Source: Guillardia theta CCMP2712
Lineage: Eukaryota > Protista > Cryptophyta
NCBI RefSeq assembly: GCF_000315625.1
Contig: NW_005434467.1
Coordinates: 37,169 to 79,109, forward strand
Direction: 5' to 3'
Length of the DNA: 41,941 nt
In this document: one piece after another, positions 3,684-40,100 of the stretch
Layout: every line of letters begins with the position of its first letter
Numbering within the stretch: position 1 is the first letter of the stretch
Translations under genes and position numbers: made by a program
Notes under the pieces: generated by a model
The model's database searches: none
Told to the model about the DNA's origin: nothing
The model's input: the letters and a program-made list of their open reading frames with translations, nothing else

Positions 3684-4350
3684 GAGGAGGATAAACCCTA
3701 CAAATCCGCCTCAACAAGACACCAGGAAACGGAGGAGGCAGCAATAACCGCTAATCCAACCACGCAAGCGACGGCATGCACGGCAAGCAGGGGAACAAGG
3801 ATCAGGACAAAGAGCAGTAGCGCAAGGCTCCTGTTTAGTTTTGAACTGTCAACCACTTGTTCCATCGATGCATTCATGCGGTTGCAATGCTATGCTGATT
3901 GGATGCGGATGCGAAGGTTGCGTTGCACTCATATGAGGTTCCAGCATCCGGCATATTGCATTAGAGAGACTGCTGCAATATGCCTGATGCTGTGAATGCA
4001 GAACATCAACAACATGAAACGTACAGTATGAAATCTTCCTCACCGACGGCTGCTCATTTCGTGAGCATCGTGTCCTGGGTTTCGCGCCGTGCGTGCAAAA
4101 TGCAACATGTCCTCGTTGAACACACAACAGGAAAGCTTTCAGGAACACAATCTTGTTGCCCAAGTGATTGTTCAACAATCGGAGGGTGAGCTCATGTGTG
4201 CAGGCTGGCATGAATCTATGCTGGCAGGATGATAGTTCATGTTATGTTGTCAACAAGGAAGAGGAGGATAAACCCTACAAACCCGCCTCAATAAAAACAC
4301 CAGGAAACGGAGGAGGCAGCAAAACCGCTACTCCAACCACGCAAGCGACG
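3684..4350 (+). repeat. Pair of ~90-bp direct repeats (3684-3773 and 4261-4350)
   Basis: gaggaggataaaccctacaaa...caccaggaaacggaggaggcagc...ccaaccacgcaagcgacg occurs twice with few differences. Confidence 0.85.
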
Positions 4351-4874
4351 TATATAGTAGTAGTATCGGAGGACGTGCCCCTGCCATGGAAGTTTGTGGT
4401 TTGAAATATTGTGCAACAATAAAATTGACAAAAAACCAATGGAAAAATATAGAACCTAATTCGAATCCTACTTATTAANNNNNNNNNNNNNNNNNNNNNN
4501 NNNNNNNNNNNNNNNNNNNNNNNNNNNNNNNNNNNNNNNNNNNNNNNNNNNNNNNNNNNNNNNNNNNNNNNNNNNNNNCCATAGCACTGCTCACGTCGGC
4601 TTTTACCGGAGCAGTTTAAGTAAAACTTTAGTACCTACAACGTGCTGAGACCTGTACACCGGAAGCCTGGGGGTGACCCGTCCTGCTGACCGTTACNNNN
4701 NNNNNNNNNNNNNNNNNNNNNNNNNNNNNNNNNNNNNNNNNNNNNNNNNNNNNNNNNNNNNNNNNNNNNNNNNNNNNNNNNNNNNNNNNNNNNNNNNNNN
4801 NNNNNNNNNNNNNNNNNNNNNNNNNNNNNNNNNNNNNNNNNNNNNNNNNNNGGGTGCCAGAGAGGCTGTACGCC

Positions 4875-4927
4875 ATGGCTGTTGGGCAGCAGGTTGTTGA
4901 CGTTGCTTGCAAGGTTATGATGATGGA

Positions 4928-4964
<37 letters not shown>

Positions 4965-16900: not shown

Positions 16901-17539
16901 TCCATCCTGTCTCCTTCCCACAACAGCTCCAACGCCATCAACGGGAGCTCAGCTGACCCCTTCGAGCCAGGCTCACCTGTATTCGTGCTGGACTCCTTCG
17001 GTCACATGCTGGGTGATCAGGCGGTCCATCAGCAGAGCATCGTGGTATCGGATGGCATCACTTACTCCTACTCCATCAGCAGCAGGCCGTCCGTCCTCGA
17101 CTCGGTCTGGAGCAGCCCACTCTTGCTGATAGTCTCAACCTCCTCGCCTACATCCGTAGACCTGTTCCTCAATGACACGGTCGCTGGCGGGTACTCCAAT
17201 GGACAGCACACTGCTCTGCTGTCCTCCAGCACGAGAATGTTTGTCTGGAAGACGGATCCTCGCAAGCTCGCGGTGCTTGCAGGACCAGCAAGCTCAGCAG
17301 CCTCTTCGGCGAGCTTCACATCCTCAACACCAGCACCTGTGGTCAACGTCGGCGCCATCGTCGGCGGCGTGATCGGCGGCATCGTCGGAGCTGCTGGGCT
17401 CGGCATGCTGGCTTACAAGCTTTTCGCGCACAAGAAAGTCGCAAAGTCAGCGGATGTAGAGATGGCGCCGGTGTACGAATCTCAGGCGATCGCCTATCTC
17501 GTGCAGTACACTACACCACCTATAGAGAGCAGAACTTGA
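4875..17539 (+). CDS. Giant secreted / type I transmembrane surface glycoprotein (~4,100+ aa) with beta-rich repeats; spans ORFs 4907-11506, 11415-13830 and 13931-17539
   Basis: Probable ATG at 4875 spliced to an acceptor at 5062, giving the signal peptide VVVLILLLMSTASLAA. Three consecutive long same-strand ORFs share repeat motifs (I.QS...P...N.I.VTL; GSGY..AP.V; E.M.V....L.V.RG..GT.A..H). C-terminal TM helix VGAIVGGVIGGIVGAAGLGMLAY is followed by KLFAHKK. The joins (frame switch ~11350-11500, N gap 13831-13930) are inferred. Confidence 0.75.
4917..5021 (+). repeat. (GAT)n microsatellite with GGA interruptions
   Basis: Directly visible ~105-bp trinucleotide tract. Confidence 0.95.
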
Positions 17540-18319: not shown

Positions 18320-21175
18320 TCACTCGGCATCGCGTCGCTCGAGCACGGACCTGAGCCGTCGGCCCGCCTCAGAAGCACGGGTGTCGGGGATGTTGGGAGG
18401 CAGGGCGGCGCCTCGGAGCCGTCGGATGCGTCGGATGTTGTACGAGTTGTCGCTAGCAAGGCTGCTCAGAGCCTCCATCGCGCTATCCTCCAACCAGCCG
18501 CTGCCCTCATGCCTTTGCATCGCCCTCACTACCGCCTCGATCGCTCCCGCCTCCCGCGCCCGCGCCTGGCTGTCTGCCATGCCTTCTGTCATGCTGCGCA
18601 AGGCCTTGCATGCATCACACTGTAGCCATCGGTCGCCTGCGTGTGTGACCATGGCGCTGACGACGGCCTCGATCGCTCCCGCCTCCCGCGCCCGCGCCTG
18701 GCTGTCCGCCATGCCCTCCGTCATGCTGCGCAAGGCCTTGCATGCATCACGCGGTATCCACCAGTCGTCCGCGTGCGTGGACATGGCGCTGACGACGGCC
18801 TCGATCGCTCCCGCCTCCCGCGCCCGCGCCTGGCTGTCAGCCATGCCCTTCGTCATGCTTTGAAGTGCTTTGCATGCTGACCATTGCAAGTAGGCCGAGC
18901 ACGCAGCCTGCTGTACCCCAGCGTCGTCCGCGTGCGTGGACATGGCGCTGACGACGGCCTCGATCGCTCCCGCCTCTCGTGCCCGCGCCTTGCTCTCTTT
19001 GATGCGGCTGACGGTATGTCTCAGGGCCCTGCACGCAGCCTGCTGTACGCTACCGTCGTCCGCGTGCCTGGACATCGCCCTCACTAACGCCTCGATCGCT
19101 CCCGCCTCGCGCGCCCGCGCCTGACTGTCTGCCATGCACTCCGTCATGCTCTCAAGTGCTTCACAGGAAGATCCTTGTACCCCAGCGTCTTCCGCGTGTC
19201 TGGTCATGGCGCTGACGACGGCCTCGATCGCTCCCGCCTGCATGGCCGGGAGCTTGTTCTGCTCGTGGCTCTCGGCTATCGCTGTCATCACCTCGCATAG
19301 ACCTTGCTGTATCTTTGCGTTGCTCTGGTGCCTGGACATGGCGCTGACGACGGCCTCGATCGCTCCCGCCTCTCGTGCCCGCGCCTGGCTCTCTTTGATG
19401 ACACTGATGGTATGTCTCAGGGCCCAGCACGCAGCCTGCTGTACCCCCGCGTCGACTGCGTGCCTGGACATGGCGCTGACGACGGCCTCGATCGCTCCCG
19501 CCTCTCGCGCCTGCGCCTGGCTCTCGTCCATGAAGCTGACAGTGAAGCGCAAGGCACAGCACGCAGCCTGCTGTACCCCTGCGTCGAATGCGTGCGTGGT
19601 CATGGCGCTGACGACGGCCTCGATCGCTCCCGCCTCTAGCGCCTTGACCTTGTCAGCCTCCCCGTGCTGAGCCATGCTGACCAAGGCTTCGCACGCAGCC
19701 TGCTGTACCTCCGCGAGAGCCTCGTACGTCCTCATCTCATGCATCACTGCCTCTATGCTGTCGTCAGCTCCCGTCCTCAGCAGCCTCCATGCCTCCCTTG
19801 CCGGCTGCTCCATCCCGACCGGCAGCGCCTGAGCTCCCGTCCTCAGCGAGCTGAGAGCGTCGCTGCCCGTGGACTCCAAGGCGATGCAAGCTGACTCTTG
19901 CAGCTCCACGAGCTCTGCGTACTTGCGCTTCCTGACTCTCCTCGCCACCGCCTCGATCCCTCCCCCCGCTGCCTCTCCGATCCTTCTCCATGCAGCTTCT
20001 GCCATGCTGCGTATGCCTCGGCATAGCGACTGGTTGCCGGCCCCTGCCCGCTGCTGTCCAGGCGTCCTGTCTGACCATGTCCATGCAGAAGCCCCCTCAT
20101 CCCCCTCGGCTCCGGCTCTTCCTACAGCTACCGCAAGCTCGGCGAACCTCGGGCGGTCCTCCTCCCTCGTCGCCCAGCAGCTCTCCAGCAGGGCCCACAA
20201 CCCGTCCGGGCATCCTCCGAGGAGGTGCTCTCGAGGCAGCCTCCCACCCCCGCACACGTACCCGATCACAGTCGGGTCCGTCATGGGGTAGTAGGGGGTC
20301 ATGCCCGAGGTCAGGATCTCCCAGCACGTGACCCCGTAGGCCCACACGTCGCTCTTCTCCGAGCACCGGCCTCTCTGCATCGACTCTGGGGGCATGTAGC
20401 GCACCGGCAGCGCTCGCCCCGCTACCCTCCCGTCACTCCCGTCCACCAGCTCCCCTGCCCGCCCGTACCCCGCCACCTTCACCGACGTCCTCCCCACGTC
20501 CTCCTTGTCGAAGCCCATGACCAGCACGTGCCGAGCCGCGAGGTCCCGGTGCACGACCCGCTGCTCAGCCAGGTGCTCCATGCCCTGCGCGATCTGCTCC
20601 ATCATCGCCGCCTGGTGCCCTCGCGTCACCTGCCCCGCCAGCCTCCCCAGCAGAGCCTCCTTCAGCGACCCCAGCTCGGCGAGCTCGGTCAGCAGCAGGG
20701 GACAGCCGTCGGCGTCGTGGCTCTGCCCCATGTAGCGTACAAGCCGAGGATGCGGCCCGAGCCTGAGCATGACCGCGGCTTGTCTGCCGCCGTCGTCTTG
20801 CGTGAGCTTGAGCACGGCTACCTTGATCTTGCCGGGCCCTGCTCTCCTCCCTTGCACGCGGAGGTGACCTATGTAGAGGGTCTGGGAGGAGCCTGCTGAG
20901 ATAGGCTGCCGCTCCATCTCCACGTCGTGGCTGGGGACGAGCAGCGCGTGTCGCTCCTGCCACTCCTGGATGGCGCTGCGGAGAGCGAGGTTGGGTACAA
21001 GGTGGTCGGAGGGGAGGAGGGCGCCGGTGAGGGGGCTGGAGAGACGATGGCGGAGCCAGGTCTCGATGGAGGATCTCTGGTAGGTGTGGCCATCGCAGCA
21101 GGTGACAGGGTCGGTCATGAGCGCCATGCTGATGGGGCAGATGAAGGACGGGAGCGCTCCCTTGTCCGCTGCCAT
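18320..21175 (-). CDS. U-box E3 ligase + tyrosine-kinase-like (pseudo)kinase + armadillo-repeat protein, copy 1 (951 aa)
   Basis: U-box: FICPISMALMTDPVTCCDGHTYQRSSIETWL...SPLTG...LVPNLALRSAIQEW. Kinase motifs: HRDLAAR, LPVRYMPPES, KSDVWAYGVTCWEI...TPY, CW...RPRF. Nine ~44-aa repeats of the form AREAGAIEAVVSAM..H..D..VQQAAC.AL. Confidence 0.9.
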   Translation of the reverse strand: MAADKGALPSFICPISMALMTDPVTCCDGHTYQRSSIETWLRHRLSSPLTGALLPSDHLVPNLALRSAIQEWQERHALLVPSHDVEMERQPISAGSSQTLYIGHLRVQGRRAGPGKIKVAVLKLTQDDGGRQAAVMLRLGPHPRLVRYMGQSHDADGCPLLLTELAELGSLKEALLGRLAGQVTRGHQAAMMEQIAQGMEHLAEQRVVHRDLAARHVLVMGFDKEDVGRTSVKVAGYGRAGELVDGSDGRVAGRALPVRYMPPESMQRGRCSEKSDVWAYGVTCWEILTSGMTPYYPMTDPTVIGYVCGGGRLPREHLLGGCPDGLWALLESCWATREEDRPRFAELAVAVGRAGAEGDEGASAWTWSDRTPGQQRAGAGNQSLCRGIRSMAEAAWRRIGEAAGGGIEAVARRVRKRKYAELVELQESACIALESTGSDALSSLRTGAQALPVGMEQPAREAWRLLRTGADDSIEAVMHEMRTYEALAEVQQAACEALVSMAQHGEADKVKALEAGAIEAVVSAMTTHAFDAGVQQAACCALRFTVSFMDESQAQAREAGAIEAVVSAMSRHAVDAGVQQAACWALRHTISVIKESQARAREAGAIEAVVSAMSRHQSNAKIQQGLCEVMTAIAESHEQNKLPAMQAGAIEAVVSAMTRHAEDAGVQGSSCEALESMTECMADSQARAREAGAIEALVRAMSRHADDGSVQQAACRALRHTVSRIKESKARAREAGAIEAVVSAMSTHADDAGVQQAACSAYLQWSACKALQSMTKGMADSQARAREAGAIEAVVSAMSTHADDWWIPRDACKALRSMTEGMADSQARAREAGAIEAVVSAMVTHAGDRWLQCDACKALRSMTEGMADSQARAREAGAIEAVVRAMQRHEGSGWLEDSAMEALSSLASDNSYNIRRIRRLRGAALPPNIPDTRASEAGRRLRSVLERRDAE

Positions 21176-23962: not shown

Positions 23963-25132
23963 ATGAAAATGGCATACGGGGAGGAGCTGCTGAGAGAGAA
24001 GACCGAGGACGGCACGACATGCGCGCAGTTGGCGAGTGTGGGAGGGCATGTGGAGATGCTGCAGTACCTTGCAGAGACATTCGGAAAGGAGCTGCTGAGG
24101 GAGAAGGACAATGACGGCTGGACATGCGCGCACTTTGCGAGTCAGGAAGGGCAGCTGGAGATGCTGCAGTACCTTGCAGAGACATACGGAAAGGAGCTGC
24201 TGAGGGAGAAGGACAATGACGGCTGGACATGCGCGCAGTTGGCGAGTCAGGAAGGGCATCTGGAGATGCTGCGGTATGTTGCAGAGACATGCGGGGAGGA
24301 GCTGCTGAGAGTCAAGACCGAGGACGGCACGACATGCGCGCACTTAGCGAGTAAGAAAGGGCAGCTGGAGATGCTGCGGTATGTTGCAGAGACATGCGGG
24401 GAGGAGCTGCTGAGAGAGAAGACCAATGGCGGCACGACATGCGCGCACTTTGCGAGTCAGGAAGGGCATCTGGAGATACTGCAGTACCTTGCAGAGACAA
24501 GCGGGGAGGAGCTGCTGGGAGAGAAGACCGAAGACGGCTGGACATGCGCGCACTTTGCGAGTCAAGGAGGGCATGTGGAGATGCTGCAGTACCTTGCAGA
24601 GACATGCGGAGAGGAGGTGCTGAGAGAGAAGACCAATGATGGCAAGAGATGCGCGCACTTCGCAAGTGTGGGAGGGCAGCTGGAGGTGCTGCGGTACCTT
24701 GCAGCGACATGCGGAGAGGAGGTGCTGAGAGAGAAGACCAATGATGGCTGGACATGCGCGCATGCAGCGAGTCAGGAAGGGCAGCTGGAGATGCTGCGGT
24801 ACCTTGCAGAGACATGCGGGGAGGAGGTGCTGAGAGAGAAGACCAATGATTGCTGGACATGCGCGCACTTTGCAAGCAATGTTGGGCAGCTGGAGGTGCT
24901 GCGGTACCTTGCATCAACATGCGGAGAGGAGCTGCTGAGGGAGAAGACCAAAGCCGGCTGGACATGCGCGCATGCAGCGAATGAAAACGGGCATCTGGAA
25001 GTGCTGCGGTACCTTGCAGAGACATGCGGGGAGGAGGTGCTGAGGGAGAAGGACCAAGACGGCAAAACATGCTTGACTCTGGCTCGTAACTCAGATGTCA
25101 AGGAATATCTTACAAGTTTAGGTGTTGACTAA
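23963..25132 (+). CDS. Ankyrin-repeat protein (10 near-identical 35-aa repeats plus a C-cap; lacks an obvious N-terminus)
   Basis: GEELLREKTxDGWTCAHFASQEGHLEMLRYLAETC repeats with 105-bp periodicity. The TCAH..A...GHLE motif matches ankyrin TPLH.AA..GH.E. Confidence 0.88.
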   Translation: MKMAYGEELLREKTEDGTTCAQLASVGGHVEMLQYLAETFGKELLREKDNDGWTCAHFASQEGQLEMLQYLAETYGKELLREKDNDGWTCAQLASQEGHLEMLRYVAETCGEELLRVKTEDGTTCAHLASKKGQLEMLRYVAETCGEELLREKTNGGTTCAHFASQEGHLEILQYLAETSGEELLGEKTEDGWTCAHFASQGGHVEMLQYLAETCGEEVLREKTNDGKRCAHFASVGGQLEVLRYLAATCGEEVLREKTNDGWTCAHAASQEGQLEMLRYLAETCGEEVLREKTNDCWTCAHFASNVGQLEVLRYLASTCGEELLREKTKAGWTCAHAANENGHLEVLRYLAETCGEEVLREKDQDGKTCLTLARNSDVKEYLTSLGVD

Positions 25133-28589: not shown

Positions 28590-30142
28590 GCTTGAAGGTC
28601 CTTGTACCACCAACAATATATAAAATACCATTGTGTGTAATGATAAAAACAGTTTTAACAGCAATTTTATCATTTTTTACAACCAACACCGTCCCCACCA
28701 CACGCAGCGCTCAGCATGAGCAGCAGCCCATCGCCGACTGCAGGGCACGTAGAGGCACCGACCTTCGCCAGCTCCCTTCTGAGCACAACGAATGCAAACT
28801 ACAGAGTATGCGAGGAAATCCGCGACCCACCCACAACAAACCAAGATCCGACATCGGACGAATCGAACCCTGATGCCCGTTACTCTCAACGTTATAAATG
28901 AGCCGCACGGCCCGAGTCGAGAGCACAGCAGAGAGCTTCTCGCTGGAGGAGGCAGCTGGCGGGTGAGGAGCAGCAGCTGTGGCCGTAGGTCGAGGACCCT
29001 GTGGCCAGCAAGGCATAGAGAGGGAGAGCGACAGCACACAGCAGCAGGGAGATGAGATGAGGGATAGAGTGAGATCGATGTCATGAGAGCGAGCGAGGAG
29101 AGTGACGGGTTGTTCAAGAGAGAGAGAGAGAGGTAGAGCCAAGACTGACTCTCCTCCTCTTCTCCACATCGCCATACCTCCCCCGAGCTCGACCCACCCT
29201 TGAGTCCAGGGGTCAGCTGGCGTAGACCAGCTGTTGTCAGCTGGAGGCTTCACCGAGGCTGCTCTTGTCACGCGCATGCGTCAGGGAGCGCTCGGGTGAT
29301 GGCCTTGCATCAAGCTTCATCTCCATCCGTAATGACCCAGACGTCACTGCAGCCCGGCGAGCTTCATGACGACATGCTCTCAGCTCCTCAGACTCATCGC
29401 ACTCCCGTGAGCAAAACCTCTGGGTTCCTCTCAGCTCCTCCACGAGGCTGCGAGAGCAGAGCACCAGCTGGAGCACGCATGTGTCAAGCAGCGTCAAGCG
29501 AGCATCTGTGAGCGCTAGAGGCATCAGAGCCTTGACTTGGACTCCAGCTGCCATCAAGCGAGTCTTGACTTGTTCTTCTCTAAGTGTGGCCTTATTGTGG
29601 CCCACTGGACCGAAATAAGATAGTTATCACTTTCAAACAATAGTAGTCGTTGCCGCACATTGGCTCGGACTAGTTCTTTCACACTCTCAACTTAAATTCT
29701 TATGGAGGGAAAGTGCACAAGAGTTTAAGCTTAACAATGAGATGAAGCTTATGTGTATTGGCAAAAACTGATAAGTCGCTGAGACTGGTCCCCTCGATAT
29801 TGCAGAGTGAACACATCTCTCCTTAAAGCCTTTCCATGCCGGAATCATCATTTGTTTTTGTTTGTTTTTGTTTGAATAAAATGAATTGCTTGAGGGTCGC
29901 TTTGACGTTCATACATGGTCCCAACTCGTCATGATGTGGCATTTTAAAGAGCATTTCAAAGATTTCAAAATCACCTACCGAAAATAGTTCTTGTCAAATC
30001 ATTTCAAGACAATGTCTACCAAACTCTTGAATATTTGCGTTGTGCTGATATGTTTCCATAGCAATGCGAACACAAGTTCTTACATGAGGAACTACCATAT
30101 GACTCTGAAAATAAAATCATTTGAAGGAGACAGATTTCAAAA

Positions 30143-32116
30143 TTACACAACCATGGTTTTAAAGGTGGATGCCAAATTCAATAGCGCCCTGCACGCCTGC
30201 TCATGTAAAGCTTCACTCGACTGATACGCCTTCATCGCACCCATGATAGCCTCCATGCCCCCGAGGTCAGCCAGCATCGCTGCGTTGTCCGCATTGACAG
30301 CCAGGTTTGCGAGCGCCCAGCACGCGTACTGCTGTACAACCTCGCTAGTCGGATGGACCTTCATCGCTCGCATAATAGCCTCCATGCCTCCTAGCACAGC
30401 AATCTTGACTGCAATATCGGCACTCTCAGCCAGGTTCGCCAGCGCCCCCAACGCCTGCTCCTGTACGCCTTGACTGTATCGATGTGCCTTCATCGCCCCC
30501 AAGATAGTCTCCAGGCCCCCTAGCCCAGCCAGCTTTGCTGCGTTGTCCGCGTTGACAGCCAGGTTTGCAAGCGCCACACATGCTTGCTCCTGAACAACAC
30601 CGCTTGCAGGATGCGCCTTCATCGCCCTCATGACAGTCTCCATGCCTCCTAGCACAGCCAGCTTTGCTGCATTGTCTTCGTTCATTGAAAGGTTCGCCAG
30701 CGCCCCCAACGCCTGCTCCTGTACGCCTTCGCTGGTTTGATGCGCCTTCATGGCGCCTATGACAGTCTCCATGCCACCTAGCCTAGCCAGCTTGACTTTG
30801 TTGTCGTCGTCTTCAGCAAGGTTCTCCAGCGCCACACATGCCTGCTGCTGTAAAGCCTCGCTCGCAAGATGTACCTTCATCGCAAGTATGATAGCTTCGA
30901 TGCCACCTTTTGCTGCTATAATAGTTCGATTTTTCTTGTTGCTTTCTGCGTAGATTCCAAGCCTAATACATGTCTGGTGCTGTACCTCCATGCAATTGAT
31001 ATTCTTCTCCATCGTCCTCATGATCAAGGTTATTTCTTGTTCCGTAGTTTGGCTCTTACTTGCAAATTGGTTCATTGCCTTCAAACTATTTACCATCTCC
31101 TGTGTAGTCTGTGCTTGTTCAAGTTGACTCATTAACAATGAGTGGTCTGATTTAGATTGGTGCTTTTTCGGGGGGGATTTTGCCGTTGGTGCAAGATTGC
31201 CTGTAGCATCGAATGCAATCTTCATCTTCTTGACCGTTGGTCTATCATTTCCTGGTAGATGGTTGTTGATACTCTCCCGTCCCTTCCATGTGATCAGGTG
31301 ACTTGACACACGAGCCAGCAGATGGCTCTCCGGAACACGTGCATTGCGTGACATTGCCCGAACATTCTCATGTAGAGTGTAGTTGCGCCCCATCCAGTAG
31401 TAGAGGTGCCTCGAAAAGTCGATCGTGTCCTCATAAGCTACTGCTGTTTCGTGTCCGATCACAAAGTCCACATGCTTGATCAGTTCCTTTGCTACGGTGC
31501 TCGAGTAAGAGAGGTTCAGCACCACCAGCCGAAGCTTCGTACAATTCTTGACCATCAGACTCAGAGAAATGCTGAGCTGCTCAGCCGTGATGCTCACGCC
31601 TCCTATGGTGATGTTGCCTTCCTTAGAGCCATGGCAGGTGAGATGCAAAATGACCGGATCAGTCAAATTGACCATGCGGGTGATGGCGGACATGTTTCTG
31701 AAGCAGCTGTACTCGAAGCTCACGCTCTTAGCAAACTTGATCAAGGCAGCATCTCCCGTCTCGTGAGATCCTTTTATGAAACGATGTCTCATCAAGTCCC
31801 TATCCTTCTCGAGTCTCAAGTCGCTTTGCTCGTCCGCATCTACGAGCAACAACACCTTATAGGGAGCTGAGTCGCACGGAAAGAGAGCCTTCTGTCCTTC
31901 CTCTTGCCCTGCTTCTTCTCCTGCTTTTTCCTTTATGCGATTGCAGCATACGCATATCTGTCTCAACTTATCACCTTTAAGTTCGATATCTACAACTTCG
32001 ATATTGCTTACTGCCTCCTCGTGGAGTCCCGTTGAGCAACGCACGTAGGGCTCGAAGGCTACAAAACCGCTTCCGCCTGTTTCGTGCCTTCTCGTGTCCC
32101 AGACTGACTGAACGAT
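30143..32116 (-). CDS. Inactive CHAT-like domain + ARM repeats; probably the 3' exon of the CHAT-helicase gene
   Basis: PVILHLTCHG...LRLVVLNLSYS...VDFVIGHETAV...IDFSRHLY is a CHAT fold with the catalytic Cys replaced by Ser. About 6-7 43-aa ARM repeats of the form GGMETV..AMKAH....VQEQAC.AL.NLA. The frame is open up to an acceptor at 32117. Confidence 0.8.
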   Translation of the reverse strand: MVQSVWDTRRHETGGSGFVAFEPYVRCSTGLHEEAVSNIEVVDIELKGDKLRQICVCCNRIKEKAGEEAGQEEGQKALFPCDSAPYKVLLLVDADEQSDLRLEKDRDLMRHRFIKGSHETGDAALIKFAKSVSFEYSCFRNMSAITRMVNLTDPVILHLTCHGSKEGNITIGGVSITAEQLSISLSLMVKNCTKLRLVVLNLSYSSTVAKELIKHVDFVIGHETAVAYEDTIDFSRHLYYWMGRNYTLHENVRAMSRNARVPESHLLARVSSHLITWKGRESINNHLPGNDRPTVKKMKIAFDATGNLAPTAKSPPKKHQSKSDHSLLMSQLEQAQTTQEMVNSLKAMNQFASKSQTTEQEITLIMRTMEKNINCMEVQHQTCIRLGIYAESNKKNRTIIAAKGGIEAIILAMKVHLASEALQQQACVALENLAEDDDNKVKLARLGGMETVIGAMKAHQTSEGVQEQALGALANLSMNEDNAAKLAVLGGMETVMRAMKAHPASGVVQEQACVALANLAVNADNAAKLAGLGGLETILGAMKAHRYSQGVQEQALGALANLAESADIAVKIAVLGGMEAIMRAMKVHPTSEVVQQYACWALANLAVNADNAAMLADLGGMEAIMGAMKAYQSSEALHEQACRALLNLASTFKTMVV

Positions 32117-32148
32117 CTGTAGCAGAGCTTAGTGATCTCAAGATTCTT

Positions 32149-35100
32149 TCAACTGTCTGCACGATAGAGAACGATAGAAGAGTTGTACGTCACCTGTTGT
32201 ACAGGTCTAGTCTTTTCCGCTGCTTGCGCACCTGGAGAGATGTGAAAAGCAACAGAACCTGAAAAATCAAGGAGAAGAGTAAGAATGCAGAGCTCATGAA
32301 ACAATGAGACTGTGCTACCTGGATCATCTTGATTGCTGGAAGTCGGGAACGATGATGATAAACTTTGAGTGCGATGGGGTACTTGTGTCTTCATCATATG
32401 ATTCGCCCTCAGCCTCCTTTTTTTCCTCCCTCCCTCGTCGTTCTGTTTTGGTAAACTCTTTTCTCGCTCCATTTGTTCAATATGATCACAAAGAGTCTTG
32501 TTGATTTTCTTCTTCTCCTCTTCCACATCAAACTTGTCTTCAAACTCTATCCCATCCAGGAAAGACAATATCCCCTCTTTGACCCGATGATTCACTATCA
32601 TCACCATTCCTTCCTTCAGCGTCCGGGTGATCGCCCGGTACAACAGCGAACGATGCATGTTGAGGTCCCTGTCCTGCTCTTCCATATCAAGACCCACTGC
32701 AATCACTATCTTGCTCTCCATCCCGTCAAAGTTTGCGACAGTGTCAAACACGATCTTCTCCTTGCATTGTTCATGCTTGCTGGTTTGAGTAGCCTTCCAT
32801 GCATCAACAGCCGCAACGAGTGAGAACCTTGACTGGAAGTCTTCATCTTGGTTCAGATGGTTTTGCAGTACTTGTCTCAAGCCCTGATTGATAAGCTTCT
32901 CATGTGCAAGAATCGCGATATTCCAGTCTAGGTCTCCAGAAAACTCTGCTATCACATCTTTCATCGCTTGCAGTATGTGAGGAATGTACTCGCTTGCTAG
33001 TTCAACTTCCGAAGTAAACGCAAAGATATAAGGCTTGACTGGACGACCATCAACCTTGTGAGGGCACGAGACTTCATCTTTTGAGATACCTCTATGAAAC
33101 AACAACGAAGCAGTCATCGTCCTGTTGCTGTTTCTGACAACTTCTGTAAGGTATACGTCTTGAAGATCCTGAGGGTAAGCGATGTTTGTGACATCAGCTT
33201 GCGAGGTGTCAGACATCAGCAGCATTGTGGACATGTCGTACTGCTTCTTCCTGATAAAGTCCGTTGCTTCCTCATCGCAGAACACATGATGCGCTTCGTC
33301 AATCACTACATACTTGTACTCCAACTCGTCCTTACTCTGCATCTCAACCTTCTCCTGTTTCTTCCGTAGACAACCATCATCCTTCTCCGTTATCAAGAAA
33401 GGACCATCCCATCCTGTCTCCCCGCGGAAGGAAAAGAAGATCCGATCAAACAGCCCTGCATCCACCAGCTTCCACTTCATCATCGAGGAGACCCAGTGCG
33501 CGATGAAGAACACAAACGCTTCAGAGCGCAGCATGAACAAAATCGAGCAGATCCTGTCCTTTTCCAGCTCTCTTAGCATCATATGCAGCGCCATGAAAGT
33601 CTTGCCTGTCCCTGCTGGGCCTTGCAGGTGAATTCCCCTCCTACCCTCCATCGCTTCCTCGCACTCCCTCGCTTTCTCCTGCTGATGAGCGGTCAATATG
33701 CTCCTTCCTTCCTCCTCCAGTAGCTTCTCAACTCGCCTCGCCGGCCTCATATAAAGAAGAAAGCGACTAGGCAGACGAGCGAGAATGCGGAGATTTGATC
33801 GAATCTGACGAAGTTTCTGACCACCGATCTTCTGCAAAGCAAAGGCCTTCGATGTGCTTGAGATGAACAAGCAGAACCCATGAAAGAGGCAGGTCATGCT
33901 TGAAGCAGATTTGTTCTGCTTCTTCGCCTCTGCCGTCTTCTGTCTCTTGTAGATGTCGAGGTACTCGAACAGGATAAGAGAAGTGATCTTATCCATTATC
34001 ATGTAACAAACGTTGCTTGGAGTCTCAATCAAGCTAGTGACGATTTGGATGGACTCAACCCTTGACCATAGAAACCTGTTCATTCTCTCCAAGATCTGGC
34101 CAGCACGCTCATTGTTCTTCTCCCAATCTTTCATTACATGCCCAATCCATGCTCGTTTGCAAGATTCGGTGTCCGGAAGACAAGCGCTCACAATCCTGTC
34201 CGTTAAGAAGATAATGGACGCGTACTTCTTCTTCCAGCCCCAAGCATCAAACTCCGCTCTATCCCAATACTTGCATGTCACATCTCGATGCCTAAATATG
34301 TCTTCTAGCACTTCCAAAAGCTCATTTTGTGATGCAGACTCAGAGATGCATTTGTCCAACTTTTCCCTGCTTTCCTCATGCAATCTGGCATCCCTCATCA
34401 CCTTCAACCACAACAACATGCACATCGTCCATGGTTGAGCTTCTTTTCCATCATTCTCAGTGTGCATATGCTTGCTGTCGTTGACAGAGATCGTATGATT
34501 CTCAGAAAAATTTCGGAAGTCTCGCAGAAGCTGAGTAATGTGCGTCTCCAAGTCACCTTTTTCTCTCTCATTTCTCGCAACGACTAGCTCAATCTGACCA
34601 TGTTCGTCTGCAGGGTCGCTTGCAACATTCGTGTTTGATTGAATCAATGCATCAGTTTCTGCCAATCCACTCTCATCGGCTGTGGGAGAACAGAGTCGAG
34701 CTGTGCGTTCCGACATCTCCCTCACCTTTACGCCGACGACACACCAGAACTCCTTCTTGCGATGTGAACTCAGCTGCTCTGTCAGCTCTTCCACAGACTT
34801 GTCAGTCTTGTCTTGAAAATCTTCTAATGCCCAGTCTTGAACCCTCAAACTCTGACAATGACTCACTGGACATCCTAGCCGGAAAGCTGAGGCATCGCAT
34901 CGACCATACAGCCTGTATCCTCGAGAGCAGCCTCTCGCTCCCATCATTGCTTCAAGCAAGGACTTTCCATGGAATAGCATACTGTAGAAAATATCTGAAA
35001 ACTCAATAGCATCATCGTCGTTCAGCCCGTCTTTGTGCCCAATCGCGAAGTCAACGACCTCCGTCAGCTTCTTCGCATGCTCATCAGACGAGCATGCGTT

Positions 35101-35502
35101 GAGCACCACTAGCTGCACCTGCGCTGCTCCTGATCTCTTCGAAATCTCGTTGTGAGCCTTGAGAGCATCGGCCATTGTTTCAACATCGACATTGCGTCTG
35201 AAAAGCTTGATCGCCTCTGTTTCGGCATGGCAGCTGAAGTGAAGAATCAGAGGCTTTCGGGTCCGGACCTCCTTGACAACCTCTCCCCATGCACAGGAAT
35301 ACGGACGGGAGAGATTATTAGCATCTATGGTGCAGATGATGGATTGGATCCGGTTGTACTCTTGTTTGAGGTTCAAACAAGGATCGTTTGGGCTGGTAGT
35401 GATGTCTACAGGGACGAAATGAAGCCGATGTGGAACTTGTGGCGTGTCAGGCTTGACTAAGCTGGGCCAGTCGATATCATCGTCTCGAGACTTCGTCGTC
35501 AT
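32149..35502 (-). CDS. CHAT (caspase-like CD-clan) protease + SF1 (UvrD/Schlafen-type) helicase protein; probably spliced onto 30143-32116
   Basis: CHAT His/Cys motifs: LNLKQEYNRI, ILHFSCHA, VVLNACSS, AIEFSDIFY. Helicase motifs: LTAHQQ, GPAGTGKT (Walker A), VVIDEAHH (Walker B), SDTSQ, LTEVVRNS, FDGMESKIV, LYRAITR. Confidence 0.88.
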   Translation of the reverse strand: MTTKSRDDDIDWPSLVKPDTPQVPHRLHFVPVDITTSPNDPCLNLKQEYNRIQSIICTIDANNLSRPYSCAWGEVVKEVRTRKPLILHFSCHAETEAIKLFRRNVDVETMADALKAHNEISKRSGAAQVQLVVLNACSSDEHAKKLTEVVDFAIGHKDGLNDDDAIEFSDIFYSMLFHGKSLLEAMMGARGCSRGYRLYGRCDASAFRLGCPVSHCQSLRVQDWALEDFQDKTDKSVEELTEQLSSHRKKEFWCVVGVKVREMSERTARLCSPTADESGLAETDALIQSNTNVASDPADEHGQIELVVARNEREKGDLETHITQLLRDFRNFSENHTISVNDSKHMHTENDGKEAQPWTMCMLLWLKVMRDARLHEESREKLDKCISESASQNELLEVLEDIFRHRDVTCKYWDRAEFDAWGWKKKYASIIFLTDRIVSACLPDTESCKRAWIGHVMKDWEKNNERAGQILERMNRFLWSRVESIQIVTSLIETPSNVCYMIMDKITSLILFEYLDIYKRQKTAEAKKQNKSASSMTCLFHGFCLFISSTSKAFALQKIGGQKLRQIRSNLRILARLPSRFLLYMRPARRVEKLLEEEGRSILTAHQQEKARECEEAMEGRRGIHLQGPAGTGKTFMALHMMLRELEKDRICSILFMLRSEAFVFFIAHWVSSMMKWKLVDAGLFDRIFFSFRGETGWDGPFLITEKDDGCLRKKQEKVEMQSKDELEYKYVVIDEAHHVFCDEEATDFIRKKQYDMSTMLLMSDTSQADVTNIAYPQDLQDVYLTEVVRNSNRTMTASLLFHRGISKDEVSCPHKVDGRPVKPYIFAFTSEVELASEYIPHILQAMKDVIAEFSGDLDWNIAILAHEKLINQGLRQVLQNHLNQDEDFQSRFSLVAAVDAWKATQTSKHEQCKEKIVFDTVANFDGMESKIVIAVGLDMEEQDRDLNMHRSLLYRAITRTLKEGMVMIVNHRVKEGILSFLDGIEFEDKFDVEEEKKKINKTLCDHIEQMEREKSLPKQNDEGGRKKRRLRANHMMKTQVPHRTQSLSSSFPTSSNQDDPGSTVSLFHELCILTLLLDFSGSVAFHISPGAQAAEKTRPVQQVTYNSSIVLYRADS

Positions 35503-35997
35503 GACAGAGATAGGAAAACAAAATCCGTTCCTATCAAATTATGAATATCTTCACCTCTTTGCTAGCTGAAAGTATCTTGGAAACGAATCAGAGGGACTGA
35601 GAGAAATTCTCGTCTCCACTCCCATCTGCCTCAGCATCTGCCCTCCTGCTCTCAGCAACCATTCCAGCCTCAGCGACGCCCAAATTTTGTGCAACTAGCA
35701 CTTCGATTTCAAAATATCCCATATATTTTCAAAACGACTCTGGTAATTTCAATGAAGGCAAACTTTGAAATCCTCCGATCTGATTTCAAGGTGTCAACCA
35801 AACCTACTTTCAGGTGATCTGAAGATTTGAAGTTTTCCGACCAATCTTTTAGCCCTTTCCAAATGCGGCATGAAACAAAGCTCACCCGGTGTTAAGTACG
35901 GTACTGAGGGACCCACTGGGGCCAGCCGGCCCGGGCTCGGCGAAAGTTGGGCCCGGGCACAATGAGGCCAGCAGCCGGACGCATGCTAGTCGGAGCC

Positions 35998-37124: not shown

Positions 37125-40100
37125 TCACTCGGCATCGCGTCGCTCGAGCACGGACCTGAGCCGTCGGCCCGCCTCAGAAGCACGGGTGTCGGGGATGTTG
37201 GGAGGCAGGGCGGCGCCTCGGAGCCGTCGGATGCGTCGGATGTTGTACGAGTTGTCGCTAGCAAGGCTGCTCAGAGCCTCCATNNNNNNNNNNNNNNNNN
37301 NNNNNNNNNNNNNNNNNNNNNNNNNNNNNNNNNNNNNNNNNNNNNNNNNNNNNNNNNNNNNNNNNNNNNNNNNNNNNNNNNNNNNNCCCTCCGTCATGCT
37401 GCGCAAGGCCTTGCATCCGTCACGCTGTATCCATCGGTCGCCTGCGTGCGTGGACATGGCGCTGACGACGGCCTCGATCGCTCCTGCCTCCCGCGCTCGC
37501 GCCTGGCTGTCTGCCATGCCCGCCGTCATGCTGCGCAAGGCCTTTGCATCCGTCACGCTGTATCCATCGGTCGCCTGCGTGCGTGGACATGGCGCTGACG
37601 ACGGCCTCGATCGCTCCCGCCTCCCGCGCCCGCGCCTGGCTGTCAGCCATGCCCTCCGTCATGCTGCGCAAGGCCTTGCATCCGTCACGCTGTATCCATC
37701 GGTCGCCTGCGTGCGTGGACATGGCGCTGACGACGGCCTCGATCGCTCCCGCCTCCCGCGCCCGCGCCTGGCTGTCTGCCATGCCCTCCGTCATGCTTTG
37801 AAGTGCTTTGCATGCTGACCATTGCATGTAACTCTCGTCCGGGTGTCTGGACATGGCGCTGACGACGGCCTCGATCGCTCCCGCCTCTCGTGCTCGCGCC
37901 TGGCTCTCTTTGATGTGACTCACTGTGTTTGTCACGGCCCTGCACGCAGTCTTCTGTACCCACCTGTCGTCCGTGTGCCTGGACATCGCCCTCACTACCG
38001 CCTCGATCGCTCCCGCCTCCCGCGCCCGCGCCTGGCTGTCTGCCATGCCCTCCGTCATGCTTACAAGTGCTTCGCAGGAAGATCCTTGTACCCCAGCGTC
38101 TTCCGCGTGCGTGGACATGGCGCTGACGACGGCCTCGATCGCTCCCGCCTGCATGGCCGGGAGCTTGTTCTGCTCGTGGCTCTCGGCTATCGCTGTCAGC
38201 ACCTCGCATAGACCTTGCTGTATCTTCGCGTTGCTCTGGTGCCTGGTCATGGCGCTGACGACGGCCTCGATCGCTTTCGCATCTCTCGCTGTGCCCTGGT
38301 ATCGGAAGTACTGCATTGTGTACTTCAGGGCCTCACACGCAGCCTGCTGTACTTGCCAGTCGTTCGCGTAACTTGACATGGCGCTGACGACGGCCTCGAT
38401 CGCTCCCGCCTCTCGTGCTCGCACCTGGCTCTCATCGCTGAAGCTGACAGTGTAGTCCAGGGCCCAGCACGCAGCCTGCTGTACCCCCGCGTCGTTCGCG
38501 TGCGTGGTCATGGCGCTGACGACGGCCTCGATCGCTCCCGCCTCCCGCGCCCGCGCCTGGCTCTCGTCCCTGAAGCTGACAGTGTTCTTCAGAGCCTCGC
38601 ACGCAGCCTGCTGTACCCCCACGTCGTCTGCGTGCGTGGTCATGGCGCTGACGACGGCCTCGATCGCTCCCGCCTCTCGAGCCCGCGACTGGCTCTCTTG
38701 GATGCGACTGACAGTATGTGTCAGGGCCCAGCACGCAGCCTGCTGTACCCCCGCGTCGTCTGCATGCGTGGTCATGGCGCTGACGACGGCCTCGATCGCT
38801 CCCGCCTCTCGCGCCTTGAGCTTGTCAGCCTCCCCGTTCTGAGCCATGCTGACCAAGGCTTCGCACGCAGCCTGCTGTACCTCCGCGAGAGCCTCGTACG
38901 TCCTCATCTCCTGCATCACCACCTCTATGCTGTCGTCAGCTCCCGTCCTCAGCAGCCTCCATGCCTCCCTTGCCGGCTGCTCCGTCCCGCTTCCGTCTTG
39001 TGCCCCTACCGCTGCCGACGCCCCGACTGGCAGTGCCTGAGCTCCCGTCCTCAGCGAGCTGAGAGCGTCGCTGCCCGTGGACTCCAAGGCGGTGCAAGCT
39101 GACTCTTGCAGCTCCACGAGCTCTGCGTACTTGCGCTTCCTGACTCTCCTCGCCACCGCCTCGATCCCTCCCCCCGCTGCCTCTCCGATCCTTCTCCATG
39201 CAGCTTCTGCCATGCTGCGTATGCCTCGGCATAGCGACTGGTTGCCGGCCTCTGCCCGCTGCTGTCCAGGCGTCCTGTCTGACCATGTCCATGCAGTAGC
39301 CCCCTCACCCCCCTCCGCTCCGGCTCTTCCTACAGCTACCGCAAGCTCGGCGAACCTCGGGCGGTCCTCCTCCCTCGTCGCCCAGCAGCTCTCCAGCAGG
39401 GCCCACAACCCGTCCGGGCATCTTCCGAGGAGGTGCTCTCGAGGAAGCCTCCCACCCCCGCACACGTACCCGATCACAGTCGGGTCCGTCATGGGGTAGT
39501 AGGGGGTCATGCCCGAGGTCAAGATCTCCCAGCACGTGACCCCGTAGGCCCACACGTCGCTCTTCTCCGAGCACCGGGCCTCTCTGCATCGACTCTGGGG
39601 GGCATGTACCGCACCGGCAGCGCTCGCCCCGCTACCCTCCCGTCACTCCCGTCCACCAGCTCCCCTGCCCGGCCCGTACCCCGGCCACCTTCACCGNNNN
39701 NNNNNNNNNNNNNNNNNNNNNNNNNNNNNNNNNNNNNNNNNNNNNNNNNNNNNNNNNNNNNNNNNNNNNNNNNNNNNNNNNNNNNNNNNNNNNNNNNNNN
39801 NNNNNNNNNNNNNNNNNNNNNNNNNNNNNNNNNNNNNNNNNNNNNNNNNNNNNNNNNNNNNNNNNNNNNNNNNNNNNNNNNNNCAGCTGGGGGAGCTCGG
39901 TCAGCAGCAGGGGACAGCAGTCGTCGTCGTGGCTCTGCCCCATGTAGCGTACAAGAAGAGGGATGCGGCCCGAGCATGAGCATGACCGCGGCTTGTCTGC
40001 CGCCGTCGTCTAGCGTGAGCTTGAGCACGGCTACCTTGATCTTGCCGGGCCCTGCTCTCCTTCCTTGCACGCGGAGGTGACCTATGTAGAGGGTCTGGGA

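What the first reader, a model, noticed from the sequence alone, without database searches (positions are those of the whole stretch)
30143..35502. Probable single ~1,740-aa CHAT protease - SF1 helicase - pseudo-CHAT - ARM protein
A phase-0 intron 32193-32117 (CAG|gtgacg...ctacag|ATC) joins the two ORFs as ...TRPVQQ|IVQSVWDT...; an in-frame 60-nt intron 32318-32259 is also likely. The layout is effector - NTPase - repeat sensor, as in NLRs, but the STAND ATPase is replaced by a Schlafen/UvrD-like SF1 helicase. CHAT proteases are known effectors in bacterial and fungal gasdermin systems and in Craspase. Inference: a nucleic-acid- or ligand-activated caspase-like immune receptor, an architecture I do not recognise as described.
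Basis: partly seen in the sequence, partly recalled or inferred. Interest (0 to 1): 0.88.

Follow-up and report, generated by a model that had tools for sequence, protein, structure and literature searches.

The report
CHAT protease fused to Schlafen-like helicase
The two reading frames are one expressed five-exon gene of a cryptophyte alga; its 1,756-residue protein joins a caspase-like (CHAT) protease, a Schlafen-like helicase, a second CHAT domain that lacks its catalytic cysteine, and armadillo repeats, a layout that resembles innate-immune receptors and that I did not find described.

Summary
Spliced transcript contigs from three studies show four GT..AG introns on the minus strand. Two were missed (32011-31958, and 30151-30105, which removes the apparent stop). 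The CDS runs 35502 to 29994 and encodes 1,756 aa.

- **CHAT1:** a compact CHAT protease closest to bacterial SAVED-CHAT (profile E 4e-28; Z 25.1, rmsd 1.9 A). The catalytic dyad is intact (H92, C137).
- **Helicase (601-1005):** an SF1 fold with all motifs intact. Its best structural matches are human SLFN11 and SLFN14.
- **CHAT2:** keeps the His but has Ser at the Cys position.
- **ARM:** about seven repeats follow.

The C-terminal half (exons 4-5) is collinear with, and 52% identical to, free-standing CHAT-ARM genes on another contig. Its head also sits on a CHAT-NACHT-WD40 gene there. The gene is therefore a fusion of two receptor-like units.

The helicase module recurs in marine protists joined to kinase, TIR, NACHT, caspase, ART and repeat domains.

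The function, an NTP- or nucleic-acid-switched protease in defence or cell-death signalling, is inferred and not shown. I rate it a new variant of a known kind.

The parts
29994..35502 (-). Whole CDS: 5 exons (35502-32319, 32258-32194, 32116-32012, 31957-30152, 30104-29994), 1,756 aa. The transcript reaches at least 35681 (5') and 29950 (3').
   Evidence: Spliced contigs of runs X1, X2 and X4; splice and translation check; coordinates.
32259..32318 (-).
   Evidence: Joint 32256/32317 with cut +2 in three runs; GT..AG.
32117..32193 (-). Intron 2, 77 nt, GT..AG, phase 0.
   Evidence: Joint in three runs. The paralog P0001 reads straight from the helicase into the same IVQSVWDTRRHE motif.
31958..32011 (-). 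Intron 3, 54 nt, GT..AG, in frame (not predicted). It lies at the junction of the two fused units and is retained in one contig.
   Evidence: Joint in three runs; X2 record 12 is contiguous across it. Homology to the C118 CHAT heads starts at the first residue of exon 4.
30105..30151 (-). Intron 4, 47 nt, GT..AG (not predicted). It removes the apparent stop at 30145-30143 and adds 36 residues that complete the last ARM repeat.
   Evidence: Joint in three runs; translation.
34864..35445 (-). CHAT1 (residues ~20-213): compact caspase-fold protease with catalytic His92 (35227-35229) and Cys137 (35092-35094).
   Evidence: phmmer against PDB 8tl0 gives E 2e-8. The family profile gives E 4.4e-28. 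Foldseek gives E 2e-12. VIA gives Z 25.1, rmsd 1.9 A. The dyad aligns with H375/C422 of SAVED-CHAT.
33703..34857 (-). Middle domain (residues 216-600): a confidently modelled helical/alpha-beta region conserved together with CHAT1 in relatives. No fold was assigned.
   Evidence: AF2 model md9d4c4bab2ae, pLDDT mostly above 85. No Pfam hit. The Atlas feature search was uninformative. It co-occurs with CHAT in P0021, P0043, P0084 and P0006.
32488..33702 (-). SF1 helicase/NTPase (residues 601-1005). Motifs: Walker A GTGKT (K634), Walker B DEAHH (D735/E736), SDTSQ, and motif VI YRAITRT.
   Evidence: Alignment A1 with its invariant motif residues; model pLDDT 85.8. Foldseek best hits are SLFN11 at 1.5e-13 and SLFN14, then UvrD, IGHMBP2, Dda and Upf1. 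Pfam gives ResIII at 3e-8 and a weak UvrD_C_2.
32194..32487 (-). Linker (residues 1006-1083), low complexity, interrupted by intron 1. It holds a basic cluster RKKRRLR (1026-1032), a possible nuclear localisation signal (inference only).
   Evidence: Translation.
32012..32116 (-). Exon 3 (residues 1084-1118): the conserved post-helicase tail motif QSVWDT...F.P.
   Evidence: It matches P0001 residues 1355-1388. The consensus Q..WDT...F.P follows the helicase in 30 distant relatives.
31262..31879 (-). CHAT2 (residues ~1145-1350): a second CHAT head. His1227 is kept, but the catalytic Cys position holds Ser1268 (31508-31510).
   Evidence: Own-genome search E 3.9e-8 against CHAT1; alignment A4; motif scan. 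It is 52% identical to the head of the C118 CHAT-ARM gene, which keeps the Cys.
29997..31024 (-). ARM repeat array (residues ~1430-1756): six clear 43-residue repeats plus degenerate flanking ones, interrupted by intron 4.
   Evidence: Pfam Arm E 2.6e-24. DNA tandem repeat of period 129/258 nt. Repeat register.

Best explanation
This is one expressed gene for a 1,756-aa chimeric, receptor-like protease built from two units.

Unit A (residues 1-1118) has an active compact CHAT protease, a conserved middle domain, a Schlafen-like SF1 helicase/NTPase with every catalytic motif intact, and a conserved QSVWDT tail.

Unit B (residues 1119-1756) is a second CHAT head whose nucleophile Cys is replaced by Ser, followed by ARM repeats. 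It is a paralog of free-standing CHAT-ARM and CHAT-NACHT-WD40 genes of the same genome.

[quoted passage not shown] Binding of a ligand drives a conformational change or oligomerisation that brings CHAT1 domains together. This activates them, as oligomerisation activates SAVED-CHAT, and they cleave downstream targets in a defence, stress or cell-death pathway. The inactive CHAT2 plus ARM half would supply protein recognition or regulation of CHAT1.

Shown here: the gene model, its expression, the folds, the motifs and the fusion origin. Inferred: every step of activation, and the biological role.
For: - **Single spliced transcript:**
- **CHAT1:** fold and dyad match SAVED-CHAT. Its H375/C422 dyad and its activation by oligomerisation are described in bioRxiv 10.1101/2023.06.23.546230.
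- **Helicase:** its best structural matches are SLFN11 and SLFN14, and its motifs are intact. ssDNA binding to the SLFN11 helicase domain activates that protein's effector domain (PMC13056530).
- **Helicase relatives:** the module recurs with kinase (7 of 30), TIR (4), RCC1, ANK, WD40 and LRR domains. It also occurs with 2xTIR+NACHT, Peptidase_C14, ART+ANK and dsrm.
- **CHAT heads in this genome:** the same head type is found on CHAT-NACHT-WD40, CHAT-ARM (at least 6) and CHAT-ANK genes.
- **Bacterial counterparts:** structure-nearest Atlas clusters are bacterial CHAT domains fused to NACHT, nSTAND1-WD40, iSTAND and AAA_35/TIR.
- **Cascade parallel:** three relatives carry Peptidase_C14 upstream of this CHAT type, echoing the SAVED-CHAT to PCaspase cascade.
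- **Conservation of the layout:** a Hanusia phi transcript (P0009) also has a second CHAT after the helicase.
Against: - There are no functional data of any kind, and no substrate was identified.
- The Gasdermin Pfam search of the genome was blank, but its controls were silent too.
- Only four helicase paralogs exist in the genome, so there is no large expansion.
- The other three paralogs lack unit B, so the full architecture may be young.
- The complex test of CHAT1 against CHAT2 gave no verdict.
- The middle domain has no assigned fold.
- The window protein falls below Pfam's gathering score for CHAT (13.6 bits against 24) and for SLFN-g3_helicase (14.5 against 24).
Confidence: 0.5

Rival explanations
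1. It is a housekeeping or regulatory nucleic-acid enzyme. The SF1 helicase would work in RNA surveillance, replication stress or transposon control. The CHAT domain would carry out a dedicated regulatory cleavage, as separase does, with no role in immunity or cell death.
For: The next-best structural relatives of the helicase are Upf1, IGHMBP2, Sen1, UvrD and Dna2. A basic NLS-like cluster lies in the linker. The family is small in this genome. Separase, a caspase-fold protease with helical repeats and a pseudo-protease domain, is a non-immune precedent (Z 12-13).
Against: The family's partner domains (TIR, NACHT, caspase, ART, kinase and repeat arrays) are typical of conflict and signalling proteins, not of conserved housekeeping helicases. 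No orthologs turned up outside protists and environmental eukaryotic contigs. Domain architecture varies greatly between close relatives.
Confidence: 0.2
2. It is a young chimeric gene with no selected function of its own. A read-through or exon-shuffling fusion joined a CHAT-helicase gene to a decaying CHAT-ARM paralog, and the Cys-to-Ser change marks the start of degeneration.
For: Unit B is absent from the other three paralogs. The fusion point coincides with an exon boundary. The nucleophile is lost, whereas 11 of 13 other heads in the genome keep it.
Against: The 1,756-codon frame is uninterrupted across five exons. All helicase and CHAT1 motifs are intact. Six ARM repeats are regular. 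Transcript depth is similar over both halves in three studies. A second CHAT after the helicase also occurs in Hanusia phi.
Confidence: 0.15
3. There are two separate genes whose ORFs merely lie head to tail.
For: The ORFs lie in different frames and are separated by a stop.
Against: A single 4,778-nt contig spans both ORFs through three GT..AG introns, and the same joints appear in three runs from three studies. The paralog and 30 distant relatives continue from the helicase into the same tail motif.
Confidence: 0.03

Closest known systems
SAVED-CHAT (type III-B CRISPR / CBASS-like effector of Haliangium ochraceum, PDB 8TL0)
   Same: It is the closest solved structure and sequence relative of CHAT1: 25% identity, Z 25.1, rmsd 1.9 A, with the same His/Cys dyad positions. 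It is a protease controlled by an attached sensor domain and activated by oligomerisation.
   Different: Its sensor is a cyclic-oligoadenylate-binding SAVED domain, and it has no helicase, no second CHAT and no ARM repeats. It is bacterial. Its substrate, PCaspase, is a separate protein, whereas some protist relatives of this gene fuse a C14 caspase to the CHAT.
Group III Schlafen proteins (human SLFN11, SLFN14, SLFN5)
   Same: The helicase domains are the best structural matches. The layout of N-terminal effector enzyme, linker and C-terminal SF1 helicase is shared. In SLFN11, ssDNA binding to the helicase domain activates the effector.
   Different: The defining Schlafen (AlbA_2-type) ribonuclease core is absent here, and the effector is a CHAT protease instead. 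The sequence match to Pfam SLFN-g3_helicase is below threshold for this protein and covers only the first third of the profile in relatives.
NLR / STAND receptors with CHAT or caspase effectors (bacterial NACHT-CHAT and nSTAND1-CHAT-WD40; the Guillardia CHAT-NACHT-WD40 gene on contig C118)
   Same: Both follow the logic of effector head, NTPase hub and repeat array. The second CHAT head of this protein is 48% identical to the head of a CHAT-NACHT-WD40 gene in the same genome.
   Different: The hub NTPase here is a two-RecA-domain SF1 helicase, not a STAND AAA+-like NTPase. The repeat array arrived together with its own, now inactive, CHAT head.
RIG-I-like receptors
   Same: A helicase acts as the sensing hub and carries N-terminal signalling or effector domains.
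   Different: RLRs are SF2 DExD/H helicases with CARD adaptors and a C-terminal RNA-end-binding domain. They carry no protease.
Craspase (gRAMP with TPR-CHAT/Csx29) and separase
   Same: Both are caspase-fold proteases combined with helical repeats. Separase also has a pseudo-protease domain next to its active one.
   Different: Their structural similarity is much weaker (Z 8-13 against 25 for SAVED-CHAT). The domain order differs, they have no helicase, and Craspase is controlled by an RNA-guided complex in trans.

Membership tests
CHAT / clan CD caspase-like cysteine proteases | Caspase-haemoglobinase fold | tested here: met
   The AF2 model of residues 1-600 matches 8tl0 with Foldseek E 2e-12 and VIA Z 25.1 (rmsd 1.9 A, 187 residues). 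Legumain, metacaspase, caspases, separase and gingipain follow at Z 12-16.
CHAT / clan CD caspase-like cysteine proteases | His-Cys catalytic dyad after strands 3 and 4 | tested here: met
   H92 and C137 align with H375 and C422 of SAVED-CHAT. His is invariant and Cys nearly invariant in alignment A4. In domain 2 the His is present but the Cys position holds Ser1268, so the feature is not met there.
CHAT / clan CD caspase-like cysteine proteases | Pfam PF12770 gathering score | tested here: not met
   13.6 bits against a cut-off of 24, E 0.046. The Pfam model is built on longer CHAT domains. The family profile nevertheless matches a solved CHAT protein at E 4.4e-28.
Superfamily 1 helicases | Two RecA-like domains with Walker A, Walker B, motif III (D..Q) and motif VI (Y.A.TR) | tested here: met
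   GTGKT at 631, DEAHH at 735, SDTSQ at 764 and YRAITRT at 955. These residues are invariant across 43 relatives. The top 50 Foldseek matches are all SF1 helicase or helicase-domain chains (Schlafen 11/14, UvrD/PcrA/Rep, Upf1-like, RecD/Dda-like).
Superfamily 1 helicases | NTP hydrolysis and translocation or unwinding | not testable with these tools
   Needs biochemistry.
Schlafen family (group III) | N-terminal Schlafen/AlbA_2 ribonuclease core | tested here: not met
   No such Pfam hit in the 1,117-aa ORF at E <= 0.1; the N-terminal domain is a CHAT fold. Only the helicase domain is Schlafen-like, so this is not a Schlafen protein.
Schlafen family (group III) | SLFN-g3 helicase domain (PF09848) | tested here: inconclusive
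   The window protein scores 14.5 bits against a cut-off of 24. Relatives P0007, P0013, P0018 and P0023 score 27-31 bits, but only over roughly the first third of the profile, 222 of 354 positions at most. SLFN11 and SLFN14 are the best structural matches.
NLR / STAND receptors | STAND NTPase (NACHT or NB-ARC) as the central module | tested here: not met
   There are only marginal P-loop-level hits (nSTAND3 at E 0.021), and the fold is an SF1 helicase. It works like an NLR in layout but is not one.
Armadillo repeat proteins | Tandem ~42-residue ARM repeats | tested here: met
   Pfam Arm E 2.6e-24 with three stretches. Six 43-residue repeats are in register. The DNA shows a 129-nt period.

The most novel reading that the evidence does not exclude
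Schlafen-like SF1 helicases are a third class of hub NTPase, beside STAND ATPases and ROCO GTPases, for modular innate-immune or cell-death receptors in protists. This gene would be a nucleic-acid-activated caspase-like receptor of that class. Its Cys-to-Ser CHAT-ARM half would be an integrated decoy, or regulator, copied from the free-standing CHAT-ARM family, in the manner of plant NLR integrated domains.
Probability: 0.25. Interest if true: 0.85.

Novelty: new variant of a known kind. Interest (0 to 1): 0.62.

Why it matters
If the inferred mechanism holds, it would be a eukaryotic case in which a caspase-like protease is wired directly to a helicase-type nucleic-acid sensor in a single polypeptide. 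That would link three systems usually studied apart: bacterial CHAT effectors (SAVED-CHAT, Craspase), animal Schlafen helicases, and NLR-like receptors.

The wider family seen here places the same helicase module beside TIR, NACHT, kinase, caspase, ADP-ribosyltransferase and repeat arrays in marine protists. This suggests an unexplored repertoire of receptor-like proteins in ecologically important algae and their relatives.

The fusion with an inactivated CHAT-ARM paralog also gives a concrete, testable example of how such receptors are assembled by exon-level domain shuffling.

Tried and rejected
- **CHAT1 with CHAT2 (complex prediction):** score 0.29 against a mark of 0.34, so no verdict. 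It counts neither for nor against binding.
- **Gasdermin (PF04598) in the own genome:** no match, but the control genomes were silent as well, so the result is uninformative.
- **Middle domain (residues 216-600):** the Atlas feature search gave only a weak, non-significant hit (0.75). The three fold searches with the 600-residue model were filled by the CHAT domain.
- **Bacterial and archaeal genomes:** The search for related loci on genome contigs with alignment A1 failed because no conserved stretch was usable, so relatives there were not surveyed.
- **Viral contigs:** only three distant partial matches.
- **PADLOC:** matches only at the P-loop (Nhi, AbiO, DinG), plus a weak SAVED_CHAT hit at E 5e-4.
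- **ARM repeats from flanking genes:** rejected as a recent origin. The ARM genes at 18320-21175 and 37420-39555 are only about 28% identical, against about 50% for the C118 CHAT-ARM genes.
- **Literature:** eight searches found no description of a CHAT-SF1 helicase architecture. This covers only the searchable library.
- **The window's own protein in databases:** no annotated protein identical to it was returned.
Full report
**Observation**

Two long minus-strand ORFs, 32149-35502 (1117 aa) and 30143-32044, lie head to tail in different frames. I laid transcript-like contigs of three public runs from three studies on 29950-35900. They show four joints, all GT..AG on the minus strand:
- 32318-32259 (60 nt)
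- 32193-32117 (77 nt)
- 32011-31958 (54 nt)
- 30151-30105 (47 nt)

The last two were missed. One contig (X4 record 17, 4,778 nt) runs from 35668 to 30700 through three introns, so both ORFs lie on one mRNA. The 47-nt intron removes the apparent stop at 30145-30143.

The spliced CDS runs from the ATG at 35502 to the stop at 29996-29994 and encodes 1,756 aa. An in-frame stop 13 codons upstream of the ATG, inside contiguous transcript sequence, fixes the start. The 179-nt leader holds three short upstream ATGs. One contig retains the 54-nt intron, which is in frame, so an isoform 18 aa longer is possible.

**Organism**

The assembly has 87.1 Mb in 669 contigs. The closest database proteins are Guillardia theta CCMP2712 models and Hanusia phi transcripts. 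The window is therefore from the cryptophyte Guillardia theta or something indistinguishable from it. No database protein identical to this gene's product was returned.

**CHAT1**

Pfam alone is weak for this domain (E 0.046). Stronger evidence comes from the solved structure of SAVED-CHAT, PDB 8TL0:
- The exon-1 protein matches 8TL0 at E 2e-8 (the entry's identity comes).
- A profile of 34 relatives matches it at E 4.4e-28.
- An AlphaFold2 model (pLDDT 85.7) superposes on it with Foldseek E 2e-12.
- VIA-align gives Z 25.1, rmsd 1.9 A over 187 residues at 25% identity. This is well above legumain, metacaspases, caspases, separase and gingipains (Z 12-16).

The published catalytic dyad H375/C422 (bioRxiv 10.1101/2023.06.23.546230) aligns with H92 and C137 here. 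CHAT1 is therefore a compact CHAT protease with an intact active site.

**Helicase**

Residues 601-1005 carry GTGKT, DEAHH, SDTSQ and YRAITRT, and these residues are invariant across 43 relatives. The model (pLDDT 85.8) is best matched by the helicase domains of human SLFN11 (E 1.5e-13) and SLFN14. UvrD/PcrA/Rep, IGHMBP2, Dda, Upf1 and RecD2 follow. It is an SF1 helicase of the Schlafen/DUF2075 type. The Schlafen nuclease core is absent, so the protein is not a Schlafen.

**Middle domain and tail**

Residues 216-600 are confidently modelled and conserved together with CHAT1 in relatives, but I could not assign a fold. After a low-complexity linker holding a basic RKKRRLR cluster, exon 3 encodes a QSVWDT...F.P motif. 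That motif follows the helicase in the paralog P0001 and in 30 distant relatives. This is independent support for the splice join.

**Second half**

Residues ~1145-1350 form a second CHAT domain (own-genome search E 3.9e-8 against CHAT1). It keeps the His (H1227) but has Ser1268 where the Cys should be. Six regular 43-residue ARM repeats and some degenerate ones follow.

The decisive new point concerns the origin of this half. Starting exactly at the first residue of exon 4, it is collinear with, and 52% identical to, a free-standing CHAT-ARM gene on contig C118. Its head is 48-49% identical to the heads of neighbouring genes there, one of which continues into NACHT and WD40 domains.

The genome holds at least 13 further CHAT heads of this compact kind, mostly of that second type. 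They sit on ARM arrays (at least six genes), on ankyrin repeats and on NACHT-WD40. Eleven of the 13 keep the His and Cys motifs. The other three CHAT-helicase paralogs (contigs C100, C61, C59) lack a second CHAT and ARM repeats.

The gene is therefore a fusion of a CHAT-helicase unit with a CHAT-ARM unit at an exon boundary, with loss of the second nucleophile. A Hanusia phi transcript (P0009) also shows a second CHAT after the helicase. Other Hanusia proteins carry the second head type on their own middle-helicase body.

**The wider family**

An exhaustive search found 2,592 proteins at E <= 1e-3 (408 at <= 1e-10). Most match the helicase module, which sits at variable positions in proteins of up to 2,669 aa. 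Among the few records that carry a name, the sources are cryptophytes, a choanoflagellate and marine or environmental eukaryotic contigs.

Partner domains include:
- protein kinase (7 of 30 sampled), TIR (4), RCC1, ankyrin, WD40 and LRR
- 2xTIR plus NACHT, FYVE/PH, PH-kinase and TPR-kinase
- ADP-ribosyltransferase plus ankyrin, dsRNA-binding motif and Peptidase_C14

Three relatives place a C14 caspase upstream of this CHAT type, which recalls the SAVED-CHAT to PCaspase cascade. By shape, the nearest Atlas clusters to CHAT1 are bacterial CHAT domains fused to NACHT, nSTAND1-WD40, iSTAND or AAA_35/TIR. Both modules therefore belong to the combinatorial repertoire typical of conflict and signalling receptors.

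**Mechanism**

What is shown: an expressed single gene, an intact protease site, intact NTPase motifs, a second protease-like domain without its cysteine, ARM repeats, and the fusion origin.

What is inferred: the helicase acts as an NTP- or nucleic-acid-dependent switch. The precedent is SLFN11, where ssDNA binding to the helicase domain activates the N-terminal nuclease (PMC13056530). Oligomerisation would then activate CHAT1, as it does SAVED-CHAT, and CHAT2-ARM would recognise or regulate partners.

I give this reading about 0.5. A non-immune nucleic-acid-metabolism role gets about 0.2, and a young chimera without a selected function about 0.15. The two-gene reading is effectively refuted. 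The test for CHAT1-CHAT2 binding gave no verdict, and the gasdermin search was uninformative.

**Novelty**

Eight literature searches found no description of a CHAT-SF1 helicase protein or of this helicase family as a receptor hub. The two Aravind-group surveys of NTP-dependent conflict systems do not mention it. The paralogs are annotated only as hypothetical, uncharacterized or 'CHAT domain-containing'. The logic of effector, NTPase and repeats is well known, and all the parts belong to known families. I therefore rate it a new variant of a known kind, of moderate to high interest.

Noticed in passing
G000 contig C118, about 112000-170000 (loci L008-L012): A tandem array of at least six genes with the same compact CHAT head. 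Four continue into long ARM arrays and one into NACHT + pentapeptide + WD40, a classical NLR-like layout. For one (657 aa) no partner domain was found.
   Followed up: partly
L014:4659-7367 (G000 contig C10): Another CHAT-ARM gene has also lost the catalytic Cys: its motif reads LNLRFS, with Arg at the Cys position. This is a second, independent pseudo-head.
   Followed up: no
window 18320-21175 (-) and 37420-39555 (-): The flanking genes also end in ARM repeats. One is U-box + protein kinase + ARM and the other is kinase (partial in this ORF) + ARM. Their repeats are only about 28% identical to those of the finding.
   Followed up: partly
window 4907-17539 (+): Three consecutive very long ORFs (2199, 843 and 1198 aa) have no Pfam match at E 1e-3. 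They may be one giant gene of unknown function. A low-GC stretch (0.35) lies just upstream at 4001-5000.
   Followed up: no
window 23963-25132 (+): A 389-aa ORF made almost entirely of ankyrin repeats.
   Followed up: no
proteins P0006, P0084, P0091 (environmental eukaryotic contigs): A Peptidase_C14 caspase domain is fused upstream of this CHAT type and the middle domain. This puts an initiator-like and an executioner-like protease in one chain.
   Followed up: partly
protein P0018 (2120 aa) and P0116 (2669 aa; locus L007): Helicase-family members with two TIR domains plus a NACHT (P0018), and with TPR + kinase (P0116).
   Followed up: partly
protein P0043 (2527 aa): The CHAT + middle-domain unit is followed by a bromodomain and a U-box instead of a helicase.
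   Followed up: no
window 32088-32117: Contigs in three runs share only these 30 bases and then diverge on both sides, with a CCT repeat on one side. They most likely come from the transcript of the C59 paralog, whose tail motif is followed by a poly-Gly run.
   Followed up: partly
window 35503-35681: The 179-nt 5' leader carries three upstream ATGs that open short ORFs of 24-28 codons. One contig has 29 further unaligned bases at its 5' end.
   Followed up: no
P0001 residues ~470-540 versus window residues ~210-280: The paralog has about 20 extra residues in a helical segment that looks like a SAM domain. This copy lacks them, and no Pfam SAM hit supports the idea.
   Followed up: no
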